Both the position numbers and the translations under genes were made by a program. Of a stretch of DNA of 64,000 nt, positions 20,701-28,218 are shown one piece after another (the first letter of the stretch is position 1; each line of letters opens with the position of its first letter). Below the pieces are notes generated by a model that made no database searches, had not been told where the DNA came from, and saw nothing but the letters and a program-made list of their open reading frames with translations. Source of the stretch: Guillardia theta CCMP2712 (taxonomy: Eukaryota; Protista; Cryptophyta). Location of the stretch: the NCBI RefSeq assembly GCF_000315625.1, contig NW_005434563.1, forward strand, positions 167,664 through 231,663, in the 5' to 3' direction.

Positions 20701-23177
20701 ATGGCTGGCATGGCTATGCCGCTGGCGGCGCTTCCTGCGCGCGCAGCTCTGAGCCCCGCGTCCTCCTCCTCCTCCTCCTCCTCTCGCAAGCGATCACCAT
20801 GGTTCGCGCTGCTCTCGACAGCAGCGCTGCTCATCGTGACCGCGGTTGCCTTGGTCCGCATCCACCCCATGGAGAGCCGTCAGGACGTGCTTGTGTCCTC
20901 GGGGAACCTCTTTGAGACCGCCCTCGCATCACAGCGACGAGATCATGCGAAGAAGCTCAAGGAGGAGGAGAAGGCGAAGAGAGACATGCGGGAGAAGATC
21001 GATCACGACGAGGGCGTTCATCATCATAAGCACCTGTCCGATGCTGCCCTGCTTCGTCAGGCTGTGAAGGCGCAGCAGCGAGACGAGATCAAGGTACCCC
21101 TCATCCAGGCACTTAGGACCCCCTCCATTTCCCCTCCCACCCCTCCATTCCTTCCTTGCCCCTTTCACACGCTTGGTGGGACCTGAATCGACCACAAAGA
21201 AGTGTTTGTCTTGCCTTCATGTAAGCTAGGGCAGGGTGACAGGGCGCGGTTGAGCGCATGCACAGGCTGAAAGGGAGAGAAGGGTGTAGAGCAACAGGAG
21301 AGGTTCTGGTGCTGTGATCTCAGAGGAAACGAGCTCCAGTGGTGGTTCTGTCCCAGCCTTTTTGTTGATTATTTCACTTCCCACTCCGCTCCCTAGGTGT
21401 CTGAGCAGGAGCTTTCCTTTCCCCCCTTACCGTCTCACTCTTCCTCCTCGTTCTTCTCTGCCCTTCTCCCCCCCTTCCTCATCTAGTCAGGGCCTTCAGG
21501 GCTCTGAAGTTTCAGCAGGCGCGCAAGGAAGCCGCGAGCATGAAGCAGCAGCTGAAGAAGAGGAGCGCGAGCGCAATGCCTACCCGGCACGAGTCTCTCT
21601 CGGACGCGAAGCTATACCAGGTGGAGGAGGCAGCATGCCGGAGCCTCAGTCCCTGACGTCTCTCAGGATGCCCTCAAGGAGCAGAAGGAGGACCGGCAGA
21701 AGGTCAAGACGGAGACTAAGAAGACAGCTGCTGTTCAGGCGAAGAAGATCCAGGTAGGAGAAGTCTCAGTGAGATTGGATGGAGATGATGACGACGATTA
21801 TGATGATGATGACGATGACGATGACGACGACGACGATGATGATGATGATGGTGTTATGTGCAACTAAGGCGCTACTTGCAAATGCGTCTCTTCTGATTGT
21901 TTCCCTTCAGAAGTTGAAGGACATGAAGAAGGCAGAGCAGCAGAAGAAACTTCAGGCCGAACTCAAGTTCATCATCAGCGCCTCGGACGTGAGCAGTAAG
22001 AAGGTGATTCTTGCACTGCCTCCCATGCTGTGCAGCCGACACTGACATGAGAAGCAGAGCGTCAAGCATACTGCAGTCGCACATCCACCAGTCAAGGTAC
22101 TTCAAGAATTCGTTTCACGCTTCTCTCTCCTCCTCCCTCCCCTTCCATGTTTCCTCCTCCTTCTCCTCCTCCTCCTCCCTGATACCCTCCCCCTCCTCTT
22201 CCGTATTCCTTGATCGGACTCCTCCTCGCTCTCCTCCCTCCTTCCTTCTACCTCTCCCTGCCTCCTGTTCGCTTCTCTCCCCTCCCCCTCCTTTTCTTTG
22301 ACTTTGTGCTAGAAGCATTCGGCTGCTCATCACAAGTCGCACGGAGACGATGTACGAGCGTCGCCTCTGCTCCTCCCTCCTCTCACTCCCTCGCAGCTGC
22401 TGGACAAGAAGGGGGAGATGAACCTCGTCAAGTATCTCGACAGTCAAACAGGGTCGAGGGTGAGTAAGAAGAGGGAGAACAGGATGAGGCCGGAGGGGAA
22501 GCGGGGGTATGAACAGAGAGCAGAGGTCTGCAGCTTCGTGTACGGAGGACAGAGAGAGTGGAGGCAGTGGGGAATCATGGGAGAATGGGAAGGAGGTGAA
22601 GGGAGGACAGGAGGAGCCATGGGAGGAGGAGCGATTGGGATGCTGAATGAGGGGCAGGCAAAGCCTGTGATCTCGGAGCAGGACGTCACTCGAGAGAAAC
22701 TGCGCAAGGAGGCCGCGGAGAAGAAAGCTGAGGAGGCCAAGGTGAAGAAGCGACATATTACTTTCCCCCTTAGCTCCTTTGAACGTCTTCGACCCTCCTC
22801 CTCCTTCTGCTACTCCTCCTCCAAATTCTTCCTTTCCTTCACCCTCCTTCTTTCCAACCTCATCATCATTTCCATCCTCTTGGTCCTCCCCTTGCCTTCT
22901 CTCTGCTTCAATTAACGTCCTCATGGCAGAGGAAGATGAAGTCTATCGTGCGGCTAGCGACCAAGTACCACGTCTCGAGCAAGCACAGGAAGGCTAAGGG
23001 CGACTGGGCGAGGAAGGCGATGTATGCTGCTGACGTGTCACTCGCGGGGAAGAAGAGCAAACGATCCTACATGAGGTGAGCTGAACCCCAGCTGGACTCG
23101 ACCTGAGCTGCTGCAGGGCTGAGTTTGCACGTGCGAACGCGATCGAGGACTCGCTGCTGAACTCGAAGCTTCGCTAG
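20701..23177 (+). CDS. Type II membrane-anchored, Lys/Glu-rich coiled-coil hypothetical protein, multi-exon
   Basis: N-terminal TM PWFALLSTAALLIVTAVALV, multiple charged helical exons bounded by GT-AG, and last exon ...NAIEDSLLNSKLR*. Confidence 0.6.
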
Positions 23178-23394
23178 AGCTGGAGAGGAAGAGAAGATGC
23201 GCATGGAGGAGGAGGAAGAAGAGAGGACAGGGGGGTATGGGAAGGAGGAAGCAGGGAGAGAGGTGCTAAGGAGGAGTCGATAGGAGTCAACTTTTGAATT
23301 TTTGCTGATCTTGCGTGAGCTGAGAACAAGGACGTTCGTCTCCCTTGCTCTGCCCTCTCCTAGTCTACACGAGGCCTCGACTGCCTCCAGCTAT

Positions 23395-26300
23395 TTACAG
23401 CGAAGCTGCTCGAGATGCTCGAGCTGCTCGGACAAGCAGCGCCAGCAGGAGCAGCGCGAAACTCGCAGCCCCTGCAGCGAGAAGGAGCATCGAATCCTGC
23501 CGCTCAGTCAGCAGAGGCAACAGGAGCAGGAACAGGAACTACCTGCTGCTGATGAGGAGGACGCTGAGTTCTCCTGCTCCACATGAGCTCGAGGGACGAG
23601 CCCTGACGGTCCATGCTGCTGGGAAGCGATAGCTGCATGGCCTCCTTGCGCGATCGATCCGCCCTGAAAGAGCTGTCAGACCGTGTTTCTCCTCTCCTCG
23701 TTCTCCCTCCGGCACTCCTTGTATCTTTCTCCCCCCATTCTCAACTCTCTCGCATTTTCTCTCCTCCTGCTCTCACCATCTCATCTCGAAGTTTGTTGCT
23801 CCAACAGTGTCCAGCTCTCGCTCTCGTTCCATCCGCTCGTGCTCCTTGTGCTTCTTTTCCTCCTGCGACACGTTAGATATCCGTTCCCTCCTCCTCCTCT
23901 CAACTCCTTCCCCGCTTCCTACTCATGTCCTATCTCTCTTTCTTCCTCCTCTCGCATCCAAACTCGCTCAAGTTGCTGCATCTCTTCGCCTTCTCACCTT
24001 CCGCTCGATCTCCTCCCCCATCCGCAGGGTCAGCGACGCCGCGTCCCTTCGCAGAAGATGTCTCTTGGCCTCCTGCGACAAGAGTGAGGCCGGCTGTCTC
24101 CTCCTTTCCTCTCCTTCTCCTCCTCCTCCCGCCCCCCTCGCACCTTCTCGACCCCTCTCCCCTCCCCCTTCCGTCCAAGGTCCCTTCATCCCCCCCTCCC
24201 CCCCCACCCCCTCCTCCCGAACCTTGAGGCGAGCATCGATCTCGCTGTTAGAGATCGCCAGCCCTCCCTGATTGGGCGGAAGTTTGGCGAAAATGGCGAG
24301 GGTGCTGGAGCCAGTGTCGATGAGGACAGTGAAGCTCTGAAGTAGCGATGAGTGTGAGCAAGCGAGAGAAAGTGAGGGAGGGAGAAAAGGGGGGGGGGGA
24401 GGAAGGAAGGGAGAGAGGAGAAGGGAGCAAGAAGGAAGGGGAACAGCGAGGAAGGGAAAAGGAGCAAGGTAGGAGACAAGACGGAACGTCAAGGGGAAAC
24501 GGAGGGAAGGTGGAGCGAGGGGAGGGAGGGACTAGAACAACTGAAGGCTACTGACCTGTCTAGGGGAACCGACGGACACATTGCAGAAGTATTGAGTTCT
24601 CATGCGATTCATCCCCACCGCAACGTGATCGATTCCTTTCCTGCTGCTGCTTCAGCCACATCCTCTTTCGTCTCCTCCTGCTCCCTCCCTGTGCTTTTCC
24701 CCATCCTCCCTGTCGCACTAATGCCCTCCTCTCGCTCCTCTTCTTCTTCCTCCTCCTCCAACCTGGCCGCGTCGTCGGCGCTCTCCTCCACCTCGATCTC
24801 GCCCCGGTGCTGCTTCACGATCGGTAACTTCAGCTCGTCTTGCTCTCCTGCAGGAGATACCGTCAGCGGCTGCAGGAGGAGCCAGACAAGGGAAGAGGAA
24901 AAGACGCCATGTAACACGAGAGACCAAAAGATGGCGTAGAAGAGGAGGAAGGGGATGAGGGAAGGAAAAGAGGAGAAGGGATCCAGAGAGGAGAGAGAGT
25001 GTACAGGTGGAGGAGGAAGAGGAAGTCGAAGAAGAGGAGGACGATGCGCAGTGACAGCAGAAGAGGACGGAAGGAGCGAAGAAGCACCTGGAGCAATAGG
25101 GACATAACGCGGATTCCGGGGAGCGATGCCGATCATGGGTGCCTGCAGCCGAGCCAAGTGAGAGGAGACAGCAAGACGAGGCAGATAAAGGAGGGAAGGG
25201 GGAGGAGCAGGAGAGGGTTGGAGGAGAGGGAGCGGGAGCGGGAGGGAGAACGGGAAAGAGGTGAGGATAGAGGATGGGGAGTGGTAGAGCTGACCTTGGG
25301 TTTTGTGAGATCAAACTCAACAACGAGAGAGCGGAAGACAACATCGCCAAGAAGAATTCCTACAGAGAAGATCAGAAGAGAAGAAGCGAAGATGGAATGC
25401 TGGGAGAGGAGGAGGAGGGATTGGTAGGAGGAGAGGGCAGGAGGAGAAGAAAAAGGTACAAGGAGAGGGCAGGAGGAGAAGAAAAAGGTACAAGGAGAGG
25501 GCAGGAGGAGGGGAGGACCTGCATAGGAGGAGGGAGTCTTCTGCACGCAGGGAGCGTTGTTCTCCTTCTGCCACCAGAACTCGTACGGGATCTCAAAGAG
25601 ATGGCCATCAATGGTAATGTAGAACGACATCCCCTGCCTCCCTTGTCAGTCTCTCCTCCCCAAACTCCTCCCCCCCCCCCCCCCCTACAAAAAAAAAAAA
25701 ACCCTTCTCAGGACTCTCCTCCTCCGGCCCACTTCCAGTCACACTTCATGTCATCTGCTCCTCCTCGCCCCTCCAGCCTCCCCCTCCTCCTCCTCTGTCC
25801 CTCCCTGACCTTGGTCATGATGTTCTTAAACTTGCTGTACGGCCGGTCGCTCACTCTCCCCTCCAGCAGCGTGTCGGGGATCACGAGGCACGTGGTCCCT
25901 GTGTCCATGATGGCAGGCAGCGCCTGCTCCACTGACTTGTCGATCCAGTCCAGCAGCTCGATCCCTCCGAAGCTCAGCGACTGAACTCTCACCGAGTACT
26001 CAGTCGTCGAAGTCGTCGGCACGTACACCATGTCAGCGTCCGTGCTCGCCCTGTCGTATCCCCCCAGCTGCAGCTCACCAGAGTCTGCCGTTGACAGGAA
26101 CGCGAACTTTCGCAGGTGCATGGGGCGCTCGTTGATGTAGTTGGCGCCCTCTAGCCCCCCCCTGTCGTTGGAGATGGCGAAGATCAGCGGCGTGGGGATG
26201 CTGGCGATCGCCGCGTCAGGCATGCCCATGCCCAGGATGCCGTCGATGCCGTTGAACGTCGGATCGTTGCAGTCAAGTGCGCACCCGAGCCTCGTCATGG

Positions 26301-27483
26301 CATAGTAGTGCCCGAGCTGGACTATGTCCTTGCACACGTAGCCTGTCAACACTGAACGATCTGCGTAGGAGACGGAGAAAGTCTCCGACTGCACCTCGAC
26401 GAAGGACAGGCTCTCCCCCGGGTCAAAACGTCTAACCGTCGACATGTCAAATTGACTGTTTTCCGCTTCCCCGCCAGACGTGCTGTTTGCGCCTGGGGTG
26501 TTAGAGGAGTTTCCTGCTGGAAGGTCGCTGGAGTCTGTGAGGGTCGCGATGACCGACGGAGCTTTGTCTCGCTTGGCAGAACCTCTCGCAACCTTCTTCA
26601 TGGTCTGCGCATCCGCATGCTGCTGGTTTCCAAGAGCCGACAAGATGAGCTTCACCTGCTCAGGGTCGATGCTCTTGAGGGCCCCGAGCACAGCGCTGCC
26701 TTCAGTCTGCGACATCTTCTCCAGCACCTTCGCCGCCTTGTCTGGGCTGAGGGAGGCGAGCGAACTGACCTCCCCCGCCAGCCCGCCCCGGTTGATCTGG
26801 ACCGTGTGCGAGGTCGCGTGCTTCATGGCAGCCTTGATGTCTTTCCATATCATCGCCTCGTTGGTAGCCCTCTCGTACGACTCTCGCTCTGCTTTCTTTT
26901 GCAGCCTTCGTTTCGCCTCTGCCTCGGGATCGCGCGCTCCTGCTGTCAGCCGAGCAAACGCGGCCGCCTCCTCCTCTGCTCGCTTCTTCGATCCCAGCTC
27001 CTGCGGCACTCCGAAAGAAATGGACGGGTCTGAGCCTCCACGAGGAGCAGCGCCGCTCCTGGACCTGCTTTCCTTCTTCCACCTCATCACGACTCCGAGC
27101 CCTCCCTCCGGCTCCTCGGAGCCTTTCTCTTGCGCCGGATGCTCAGCCTGTCTCTGGTTGACTGCCAGGGTCTTGTCGGGGCGCCTGCCATGCTGGACAA
27201 GCTGCTGCACTGTCGCATGTGTTGAGAGCTGCTGCCGCGCGAGCAGCTTCTGCGAAAGCTTCTGAGAGGCTTGATCGCTGGCTGGGGTGAGAGGAGAGGA
27301 GAGGATTCGCTCTACTTCATCCAACCCCGAGTTCTGGTTGCTGAGAGCGGACTTGAGCCTCAGTCTCATCTGCGCCGCATCCTTGGAGATGTCAGTCGAC
27401 TTGAGGTCAACATCCAGTGACAGCACTGGAAACGCGAAGATGAATACAAACAACAACGACTGGAGGATGCCGGTATGCGCCAT
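23395..27483 (-). CDS. Pepsin-family (A1) aspartic protease, circularly permuted, with signal peptide and C-terminal TM anchor
   Basis: Phase-consistent exons 27483-25810, 25633-25519, 25359-25295, 25142-25088, 24847-24763, 24640-24556, 24336-24223, plus later exons. Motifs in order: FDP, SYAD, DGILGMG, LGGYD, IMDTGTT, ILLGDVVFRS, IGIAP, then QYFCNVSVGSPRQSFTVLIDTGSSTL. Ends LLLAAGAASFALLLLALLVR...SL*. Confidence 0.9.
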
Positions 27484-28218
27484 GGTGGTCCCTCTTTGAA
27501 TATCAGAGCATGATGTATGGGCCTGACCAACAGAACAAGTCAAAGTTCACTTTCACGACAACGTGGATCTCAAGAGCTACAGGAAAGAGTTCACAGGACT
27601 GAGAGGATGAAACAAGATCCACACCGGCAGACACAACAACGCAAATAATAGAGATAGAGATAGAGATAGAAAGGCATACCTTCAACGTCTCAACTATCAA
27701 CCTGCTCTGACTTTATTGATGTTCACTCCTGATGTACCCACCAAGGCATTGCGACGCTGGCCCATTCCTGCTACCAAAACAGTGTTACAAAGGCCGGCAG
27801 GTCTACCTTCCGTCCTTTCTGTTCTTGAAACATATTGTTTCGTTCATAATCCTCATCATCAAACAACAAAACAACGTTGACATAACCTATTGCAAACATC
27901 TCTACCTTCCCCTCAACTTGTCAACAGGTAATGCTGCCGGCTTTCGTGTATTCAAAACAAAGCTGCTCCGATCGTATTACCCCAATTCAAAAAGCCACAT
28001 ACAAGGGGAGCATGTTAACATAGCAAGAATCGTCTCCAAACTCGATCTCAATTTCAACGATGCAGTTTATATGCCACCTCTACGAGTTTAAATAGAAATC
28101 CTTTTCTTCTCTTTGGAACAAAACTTCATGCTTAAGATTGCTTTCGTCACTGACGGAAATCTTCACGTGTCATGTTGATCATCTCGACTATCTCGACAAG
28201 AGCCTACCTCAAACATTC

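What the first reader, a model, noticed from the sequence alone, without database searches (positions are those of the whole stretch)
23395..27483. Naturally circularly permuted pepsin-family aspartic protease
Known: A1 proteases run prosegment, Y..I.IGTPPQ.F.V.FDTGSS (Asp32), FDP..S, flap Y, DGILG, LGG.D, DTGT (Asp215), ILGD, IG.A (C-terminus). Seen: after a signal peptide and ~330-aa extension with no DTG, the fold starts at RRFDPGES and runs through DTGTT (25891-25905), ILLGDVVFRS and MIGIAP. It then continues in frame through phase-consistent GT-AG introns into a prosegment-like strand (ELKLPIVKQHR) and the missing N-terminal segment QYFCNVSVGSPRQ|SFTVLIDTGSSTLAIF (DTGSS at 24304-24318), then a charged stalk and TM anchor. 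Each catalytic motif occurs once, in reversed order, and the two pieces are complementary, leaving out only the loop between DTGSS..L and FDP. Inference: permutation by tandem duplication and trimming. It is plausible because pepsin's termini meet in the interdomain sheet. The remnant prosegment is now an internal linker, implying a different activation mechanism and tethering of the Asp32 strand to the membrane. I know of no described natural example, but have not searched.
Basis: partly seen in the sequence, partly recalled or inferred. Interest (0 to 1): 0.92.

Follow-up and report, generated by a model that had tools for sequence, protein, structure and literature searches.

The report
Circularly permuted pepsin-family protease family
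This alga makes a pepsin-type protease whose first ~40 residues, carrying one of the two catalytic aspartates, have moved to the end of the chain; the rearranged form is expressed, is shared by a whole protein family, and was not found described in the papers searched.

Summary
The window is from Guillardia theta CCMP2712. An 11-exon, all GT-AG gene on the minus strand (27483-23395) translates exactly to the annotated 858-aa protein. Intron-free contigs from three studies carry all exons in one transcript.

Pfam Asp positions 37-309 match residues 345-618. Positions 1-30 match residues 681-710, downstream. Against human pepsin, the family profile covers residues 49-324 first and 1-41 second. 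Only the 42-48 loop is missing.

AlphaFold gives one pepsin fold (pTM 0.86; Z 23 to pepsin). In a controlled docking test the tail binds the body (0.88 vs 0.39) with canonical contacts.

It is a family trait. At least nine G. theta paralogues encode the same order in single uninterrupted ORFs, and no canonical-order copy was found in the genome. 170 of 296 retrieved proteins are permuted: five cryptophyte genera and one jakobid. They form one side of a 100%-supported branch. Both catalytic Asp are invariant in 36 of 36 members.

The "prosegment-like" reading of the linker is not supported. Activity and the evolutionary route are inferred. The scan's first readers flagged the same idea on seven other pieces of this genome.

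The parts
23395..27483 (-). Coding region of the permuted A1 protease gene. It has 11 exons: 27483-25810, 25633-25519, 25359-25295, 25142-25088, 24847-24763, 24640-24556, 24336-24223, 24072-23998, 23862-23777, 23663-23543 and 23496-23395. It encodes 858 aa plus a stop.
   Evidence: The translation equals P0001 exactly and all introns are GT-AG. Spliced contigs from three studies carry all exons.
27415..27483 (-). Signal peptide (about aa 1-23).
   Evidence: A hydrophobic N-terminus read directly from the sequence. No predictor was run.
26452..27414 (-). N-terminal extension (aa 24-344), with no DTG motif and no significant family match.
   Evidence: Pfam gives only sub-threshold MgtE_N and FliG-like hits. 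The extension is conserved in orthologues P0002-P0006.
25113..26451 (-). Body of the fold (aa 345-628, crossing introns 1-3), equivalent to pepsin residues ~47-326. It holds the flap Tyr373, DGILG at 414-418, DTGTT at 527-531 and ILLGD at 598-602.
   Evidence: Pfam Asp profile 37-309. Family profile against 1PSN residues 49-324. VIA Z 23, rmsd 2.1 A over 251 residues.
25891..25905 (-). DTGTT, the Asp215-equivalent catalytic motif (D527).
   Evidence: The Asp is invariant in 36 of 36 family members.
24765..25112 (-). Linker (aa 629-664, crossing intron 4) that joins the ancestral C-terminus to the ancestral N-terminus. It includes the ELKLPIVKQHR stretch.
   Evidence: pLDDT is below 50 over P0001 residues 640-665. 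No propeptide match was found. Family linker length has a median of 44 and a range of 17-246.
24283..24764 (-). Relocated N-terminal segment, the 'tail' (aa 665-711, crossing introns 5 and 6), equivalent to pepsin residues 1-41.
   Evidence: Pfam Asp profile 1-30 at E 3e-7. Family profile against pepsin 1-41 at E 3.9e-8. Four strands at pLDDT 86-95. The tail docks on the body at 0.88 against 0.39 for the best control.
24304..24318 (-). DTGSS, the Asp32-equivalent catalytic motif (D700).
   Evidence: D-T-G-S is invariant in 36 of 36 members.
23488..24282 (-). Charged stalk (aa 712-828, crossing introns 7-10).
   Evidence: Read from the sequence. No family match was found.
23431..23487 (-). C-terminal transmembrane helix (aa 829-847), followed by an 11-aa basic tail.
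   Evidence: The Kyte-Doolittle 19-residue mean is 2.67. 110 of 155 permuted relatives have such a segment after the tail.
27523..27679 (-). Intron in the 5' UTR.
   Evidence: The contigs of X1, X2 and X5 join 27522 to 27680 (table 8).

Best explanation
The gene encodes a type I membrane-anchored pepsin-family (MEROPS A1) aspartic protease whose chain is circularly permuted. After a signal peptide and a ~320-aa extension, the chain enters the fold at the equivalent of pepsin residue ~47. It runs through the rest of the N-lobe and the whole C-lobe, including Asp215 (D527). It then crosses a ~35-aa flexible linker and ends with the equivalent of pepsin residues 1-41. That last piece is the first interdomain strand plus the hairpin carrying Asp32 (D700). 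A charged stalk and a TM helix follow. The relocated segment packs back into its ancestral place, so a normal two-Asp active site forms on the luminal or extracellular side. The arrangement is inherited: it defines a family that probably arose once, and it is the only A1 form found in the G. theta genome. Shown here: the gene structure, the single transcript, the swapped homology, conservation of the catalytic residues, the single branch in the tree, and the predicted fold and contacts. Inferred: enzymatic activity, membrane topology, and the absence of a classical N-terminal zymogen mechanism.
For: - Gene and transcript: the exon model equals P0001, and intron-free contigs from three studies carry all exons.
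- Swapped homology: Pfam Asp profile 37-309, then 1-30. The family profile matches pepsin 1PSN residues 49-324 and 1-41 as two complementary pieces.
- Independence from splicing: nine paralogous loci hold DSGTS...ILGD...DTGS in one open frame.
- Whole genome: all 10 detected profile-1-3x pieces lie downstream of a body piece and none lies upstream.
- Family size: 170 of 296 retrieved proteins have body-then-tail order.
- Named members: Guillardia, Hanusia, Rhodomonas, Hemiselmis, Baffinella and Andalucia godoyi.
- Tree on the body region alone: 44 permuted rows against 17 canonical rows are split by one branch, SH-aLRT 100.
- Conservation: D527, D700-T-G-S, G415, G418 and G601 are 36/36; the flap Tyr is Y in 26 and F in 9 of 36.
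- Structure: AF2 pTM 0.86 with the tail at pLDDT 86-95; VIA Z 23 to pepsin residues 47-326.
- Docking of body plus tail as two chains: 0.88 against a best control of 0.39. This mark was reached by 51 of 78 solved complexes and 2 of 108 mismatched pairs. The runs agree in at least 88% of contacts and the partner pLDDT is at least 77. Contacts: 417/418 with 699/700; residues 525-532 are in the interface; 353 with 709/710; 633-639 and 667-675 are both in the interface.
Against: - No enzymatic or structural experiment exists.
- The docking pass may partly reflect the model's memory of solved pepsins.
- The RNA status of the contig runs is a guess by the index; splicing is inferred from the missing introns.
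- One junction (24640/24763) is supported by length arithmetic only.
- The canonical sample in the tree is small (17 domains from about 10 proteins) and was chosen by similarity to the permuted profile.
- The Andalucia member has DSA in place of DSG and sits on a long branch.
Confidence: 0.87

Rival explanations
1. It is an artefact: a misassembly, or a gene model that fuses the 3' part of one A1 gene with the 5' part of a neighbouring one.
For: Tandem A1 genes are common, and some annotated proteins do show tail-body-tail-body order (P0121, P0131, P0139, P0173). The tail lies on separate exons in this gene.
Against: Spliced contigs from three studies carry all exons in one molecule. Nine paralogues encode the same order in single uninterrupted ORFs. 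Homologues in other genera, some from transcriptomes, have the same order. There is no signal peptide or start codon in front of the tail, and no body follows it.
Confidence: 0.01
2. It is a permuted but non-catalytic pepsin-fold protein: a pseudoprotease used as a binding or surface protein, like the xylanase inhibitor TAXI-I or the pregnancy-associated glycoproteins.
For: Activity is untested. Pfam also gives TAXi_N hits. One family member has DSA instead of DSG. An earlier scan note calls another paralogue catalytically degenerate.
Against: In this protein both D[TS]G motifs, the flap Tyr, DGILG and ILGD are all intact. Across 36 diverse members both Asp are invariant, which is the pattern of purifying selection on catalysis.
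Confidence: 0.08
3. The mature enzyme has two chains. The disordered linker is cut, autocatalytically or by another protease. This would leave a soluble body bound non-covalently to a small membrane-anchored chain that carries Asp32, so the linker would act as an internal activation segment.
For: The linker has pLDDT <50 and its length varies from 17 to 246 residues across the family. Body and tail dock as separate chains. By general knowledge, some canonical A1 enzymes such as cathepsin D are processed into two chains.
Against: No evidence of cleavage exists. There is no detectable homology of the linker to A1 propeptides. This reading refines the main explanation and does not replace it.
Confidence: 0.3

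Closest known systems
Pepsin, cathepsin D and renin (MEROPS family A1, subfamily A1A)
   Same: Same bilobal fold (Z 23, rmsd 2.1 A over 251 residues). Same two D[TS]G catalytic motifs, flap Tyr, DGILG and ILGD psi-loop motifs. Pfam Asp scores far above its cut-off.
   Different: The chain order is body (47-326) then residues 1-41, and the 42-48 loop that holds the Cys45-Cys50 disulfide is deleted. No N-terminal prosegment was detected. A compact paralogue such as P0029 has only about 15-25 residues between the likely signal peptide and the fold.
BACE1 (memapsin 2), a type I membrane-anchored A1 protease
   Same: Signal peptide, luminal A1 domain, single C-terminal TM helix and short cytosolic tail. 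BACE1 appears among the PDB matches.
   Different: BACE1 has the canonical order and an N-terminal propeptide. In the permuted protein the strand carrying Asp32 is the part nearest the membrane anchor.
Plant-specific insert ('swaposin') of plant aspartic proteases
   Same: It was the only circular permutation tied to aspartic proteases that the literature search returned (PMC8683733).
   Different: There the inserted saposin-like domain is permuted relative to saposins. The protease fold itself is canonical.
Tandem-domain A1 proteins (tail-body-tail-body order), e.g. P0139 of Cymbomonas and P0131 of Spathaspora
   Same: They show the kind of head-to-tail A1 duplication from which trimming both ends would give body-then-tail order.
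   Different: They come from unrelated taxa, may be gene-model fusions, and fall on the canonical side of the tree. They are not specific intermediates.

Membership tests
MEROPS A1 / Pfam PF00026 (pepsin family) | Sequence match to the family model above the curated threshold | tested here: met
   104.7 bits against a cut-off of 19.9, in two stretches.
MEROPS A1 / Pfam PF00026 (pepsin family) | Two catalytic Asp in D[TS]G motifs, one per lobe | tested here: met
   D700 (DTGSS) and D527 (DTGTT). Both are 36/36 invariant across the family.
MEROPS A1 / Pfam PF00026 (pepsin family) | Bilobal pepsin fold | tested here: met
   AF2 pTM 0.86. VIA Z 23 to pepsin, chymosin and renin. All top Foldseek hits are A1 enzymes. 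This rests on a predicted model, not an experimental one.
MEROPS A1 / Pfam PF00026 (pepsin family) | Flap with Tyr75 | tested here: met
   Y373 lies in the SVSYAD stretch, the segment that aligns with pepsin's flap region in the family profile. Across the family it is Y in 26 and F in 9 of 36.
MEROPS A1 / Pfam PF00026 (pepsin family) | Canonical order: Asp32 segment, then the rest of the N-lobe, then the C-lobe | tested here: not met
   Profile 37-309 precedes profile 1-30. Pepsin 49-324 precedes 1-41. This is the variant feature.
MEROPS A1 / Pfam PF00026 (pepsin family) | N-terminal prosegment (zymogen), PF07966 | tested here: not met
   No A1_Propeptide hit at E<=10, either in the full protein or in aa 630-740. 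Many A1 members also lack a match to this model, so this test is weak.
MEROPS A1 / Pfam PF00026 (pepsin family) | Pepstatin-sensitive endopeptidase activity at acid pH | not testable with these tools
   This needs the recombinant protein.
Natural circular permutant | Two segments, each homologous to a contiguous canonical sequence, complementary and in swapped order | tested here: met
   pepsin 1-41 and 49-324 are covered once each.
Natural circular permutant | Ancestral termini joined by a linker, and the new termini adjacent in space | tested here: met
   Residues 633-639 and 667-675 are both in the predicted interface, and residue 353 touches 709/710. This is a prediction only.
Natural circular permutant | Heritable and under selection, not a one-off rearrangement | tested here: met
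   170 permuted proteins were retrieved, they sit on one side of a 100%-supported branch, and the catalytic residues are invariant.

The most novel reading that the evidence does not exclude
The permutation happened once, early in eukaryote history, or spread by gene transfer between a jakobid and the cryptophytes. It then replaced the canonical A1 form entirely in cryptophytes. With the classical N-terminal prosegment lost, these enzymes would be controlled in a new way. The disordered internal linker would serve as a built-in activation segment, and its cleavage would yield a two-chain protease whose Asp32-bearing small chain stays anchored in the membrane.
Probability: 0.2. Interest if true: 0.85.

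Novelty: new variant of a known kind. Interest (0 to 1): 0.72.

Why it matters
The pepsin family is one of the most studied enzyme families, and to my knowledge its chain order has been treated as invariant. A natural, conserved permutation cuts inside the N-lobe, between the Asp32 hairpin and the rest of the lobe. This shows that the fold tolerates that break and that the ancestral termini can be joined. It also gives a natural test case for three questions:

- How does the bilobal fold form when the Asp32 hairpin is made last?
- How is activity held in check without an N-terminal prosegment?
- How do circular permutations become fixed across a whole gene family?

There is a practical point too. 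Domain-order-aware annotation currently labels these proteins simply as "Peptidase A1 domain-containing", which hides the rearrangement.

Tried and rejected
- Misassembly or gene fusion: rejected.
- First guess for the last acceptor (23471): wrong, because the frame broke. The contigs and P0001 use 23496.
- Alternative acceptor at 24869: it breaks the frame and the contigs do not use it.
- Prosegment homology of the linker: no support.
- A duplication remnant in paralogue L002, whose tail matched the Asp profile out to position 74: on reading it, the extension is a weak alignment into a stalk followed by a TM helix, so it is not usable evidence.
- Tandem tail-body-tail-body proteins as specific intermediates: they come from sheep, yeast, Cymbomonas and a Mortierellaceae fungus, rank high partly because several domains add up their scores, and fall on the canonical side of the tree.
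- ESM Atlas by features and by structure: only canonical A1 clusters came back, and none covers the tail. The Atlas holds only clusters of 50 or more members, so this says little.
- Pfam on the N-terminal extension, the stalk and five neighbouring ORFs: nothing significant.
- Word-index search with the Andalucia protein: only one further relative was found.
- Literature: six searches and one paper look-up found no description of a permuted pepsin fold. The library lacks most subscription journals, so absence is not proof.
- Measuring the Asp-Asp distance: not possible, because model coordinates are not exposed.
Full report
**What is there**

The window comes from Guillardia theta CCMP2712, a cryptophyte alga. 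Exon 1 is 100% identical to the annotated protein P0001, "aspartic endopeptidase, secreted", 858 aa.

On the minus strand I built an 11-exon model from 27483 to 23395. All ten coding introns are GT-AG, and the translation equals P0001 residue for residue.

**One transcript**

I laid public runs on 23000-27800. Single intron-free contigs from three different studies carry the 5' UTR, exon 1 and every later exon down to the 3' end: X1 (3987 nt), X2 (4049 nt) and X5 (2343 nt, plus a second contig for the 5' end).

- Nine of the ten coding junctions are listed explicitly as joints with CT..AC ends on the + strand.
- The tenth (24640/24763) lies in a masked purine-rich repeat and is not listed. However, contig positions 1372-2172 hold 801 letters, exactly the sum of exons 2 to 10, so the 85-nt exon 5 must be present and joined as modelled.
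- The index only guesses that these runs are RNA. The missing introns are what show splicing.
- Raw 3'-biased RNA reads (X19) give a poly(A) site near 23287.

**The order really is swapped, and the pieces are complementary**

- Pfam Asp (PF00026) matches P0001 at 104.7 bits in two stretches. Profile positions 37-309 fall at residues 345-618. Profile positions 1-30 fall at residues 681-710 (E 3e-7 when scanned alone).
- A profile of 36 family members against all PDB sequences hits human pepsin 1PSN in two pieces. Profile 337-377 matches pepsin residues 1-41 (E 3.9e-8). Profile 4-283 matches pepsin residues 49-324.
- Only pepsin residues 42-48 have no counterpart. By my own knowledge of pepsin, that is the loop with the Cys45-Cys50 disulfide.

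**Predicted structure**

AlphaFold2 on the domain (P0001 343-723, with a 36-sequence alignment) gives mean pLDDT 86.6 and pTM 0.86.

- The relocated tail forms four strands at pLDDT 86-95. Their spacing matches the first four strands of pepsin as I recall them.
- Only residues 640-665 of the linker and the last six residues fall below pLDDT 50.
- All top Foldseek hits are A1 enzymes.
- VIA aligns model residues 1-286 to pepsin residues 46/47-326 with Z 23 and rmsd 2.1 A over 251 residues.

As a controlled substitute I submitted the body (343-640) and the tail (662-723) as two chains.

- The score was 0.88 against 0.39 for the best of three controls. In the tool's calibration this mark was reached by 51 of 78 solved complexes and 2 of 108 mismatched pairs.
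- The runs agree in at least 88% of contacts, and the partner pLDDT is at least 77.
- The lowest-error contacts are those expected of a canonical pepsin:
  - Tail residues 697-700 (ending in the catalytic Asp) pack on residues 415-418 of the DGILG strand.
  - Body residues 525-532 (the DTGT loop) are in the interface with tail residues 695-714.
  - Residues 633-639 (the body's C-terminal stretch) and the tail's first strand (667-675) are both in the interface.
  - Tail residues 709/710 touch F353 at the start of the body, so the two ends created by the cut are adjacent.
- The tool warns that a pass can come from memory of solved relatives. I read the result as "this is arranged like pepsin", not as an independent measurement.

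**It is a family, not a single gene**

Within the G. theta genome:
- A six-frame search with a compact paralogue (P0029, with UniRef and MMETSP among its sources) gave 41 matches at many loci.
- In nine fetched loci, one uninterrupted open frame holds DSGT[ST], then the ILGD-type motif where my pattern found one (seven of the nine), then DTGS. The order therefore does not depend on splicing or gene modelling.
- A PF00026 search of the whole genome scored all 37 candidates. Every body match starts at profile position 37 or later. All ten detected pieces matching profile positions 1-3x lie downstream of a body piece, and none lies upstream. No canonical-order A1 gene was seen in this genome.

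Beyond this genome:
- A profile search of 1.84 billion representative proteins gave 5167 hits at E<=0.001 and 104 at E<=1e-30.
- I built separate body and tail HMMs and recorded their order. Among the first 179 proteins, 86 are body-then-tail and 10 are tail-then-body (the first of these at about rank 121). The rest are fragments.
- Named members come from Guillardia, Hanusia, Rhodomonas, Hemiselmis and Baffinella, all cryptophytes by my own knowledge.
- One more named member is P0109, tagged ANDGO_05950. I read the tag as Andalucia godoyi, a jakobid. It is only 25-31% identical to the cryptophyte proteins, so it is not contamination from them. It has DSA in place of DSG in the C-lobe motif.
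- Two unnamed metagenomic members sit on contigs whose neighbouring genes include RCC1, LRR and MA3 domains, which point to eukaryotes.

**Single origin and selection**

A maximum-likelihood tree of the body region alone puts all 44 permuted rows on one side and all 17 canonical rows on the other side of one branch, with SH-aLRT 100. This fits one origin. The canonical sample is small, it was chosen by similarity to the permuted profile, and the tree is unrooted.

Across the 36 aligned permuted members:

| Position | Conservation |
|---|---|
| D527 | 36/36 |
| G529 | 35/36 |
| D700-T-G-S | 36/36 |
| G415, G418, G601 | 36/36 |
| Flap position 373 | Tyr in 26, Phe in 9 |

This is the pattern of an active enzyme.

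**Architecture and likely working**

The protein has a signal peptide, a 320-aa extension of unknown function, the permuted catalytic domain, a charged stalk of about 117 aa, a TM helix (aa 829-847) and an 11-aa basic tail. Among the permuted relatives with enough sequence after the tail, 110 of 155 have a strongly hydrophobic 19-mer there (this count includes close cluster members).

I infer a type I membrane protein with the protease domain facing the lumen or the outside. In general layout it resembles BACE1.

Compact paralogues start the fold a few residues after the signal peptide, and no A1 propeptide is detectable. The classical zymogen mechanism therefore probably does not apply. In that mechanism, by my own knowledge, an N-terminal prosegment strand occupies the place of the mature N-terminus. 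Whether the linker has a regulatory role is open.

**The prosegment claim**

The stretch ELKLPIVKQHR does look like the first strand of pepsinogen's propeptide. However:
- It gave no match to PF07966 at E<=10.
- The profile search reported no alignment reaching into a prosegment.
- It is predicted to be disordered.
- It is conserved only among the close orthologues, not across the family.

I treat it as a resemblance only.

**Origin**

Duplication followed by trimming is the textbook route to a circular permutation. Tandem A1 proteins do exist, but those found are from unrelated taxa and fall on the canonical side of the tree. They show that the raw material is common and nothing more. I could not test the route.

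**Novelty**

Six full-text searches and one paper look-up found no description of a permuted pepsin fold. The only permutation linked to aspartic proteases was the saposin-like plant-specific insert. The library lacks most subscription journals.

The scan's own first-stage readers flagged the same idea on seven other pieces of this genome, and none of those notes had been followed up. These notes fit the paralogues I found independently, but I did not map them one to one.

Circular permutation as a phenomenon is well known, and this is still an A1 protease, so I class it as a new variant of a known kind.

Noticed in passing
window 26452-27414 (-), P0001 aa 24-344: The N-terminal extension of about 320 aa is conserved in orthologues (P0002-P0006). 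Many metagenomic proteins (P0018-P0026) match it together with the start of the body. Pfam gives only sub-threshold MgtE_N and FliG-like helical hits at aa ~242-293. Its function is unknown; it could be a regulatory or pro-domain.
   Followed up: partly
window 23000-23330 (+): A convergent gene on the + strand ends about where this gene's 3' UTR ends, with the poly(A) site near 23287. It has a 41-nt GT..AG intron at 23074-23114. The X1 and X2 contigs run on across both genes. ORFs in that region gave no Pfam match.
   Followed up: partly
window 25686-25710 (intron 1): A T-run followed by a G-run in intron 1 collects RNA-read ends (19 molecules end at 25710) and loose A-runs. This looks like internal oligo-dT priming on unspliced RNA, not a real transcript end. 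T>C differences were seen at 25686 and 24197, and a 1-nt deletion at 25027. All three lie in introns.
   Followed up: no
P0109 (Andalucia godoyi, ANDGO_05950): A jakobid protein has the same layout: signal peptide, body, linker, tail, TM helix. Its C-lobe motif is DSA instead of DSG, and it sits on a long branch inside the permuted group. This is either an ancient origin or a gene transfer.
   Followed up: partly
P0121, P0139 (tandem canonical A1 proteins): In each of these proteins the two A1 domains are identical over the columns kept for the tree. That points to a very recent duplication or an assembly or annotation artefact.
   Followed up: no
L002:2416-2796 (G. theta paralogue on contig C9): The tail's Pfam Asp match runs on to profile position 74, past DTGST. 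On reading it, the extra part is a weak alignment into the stalk. I did not accept it as a remnant of a second copy.
   Followed up: yes
G000 contig C107:170900-176100 (-): The gene for paralogue P0029 is split into at least twelve short exon-sized matches at 57-97% identity. This contrasts with the intronless paralogues elsewhere in the genome, so intron load differs greatly within the family.
   Followed up: no
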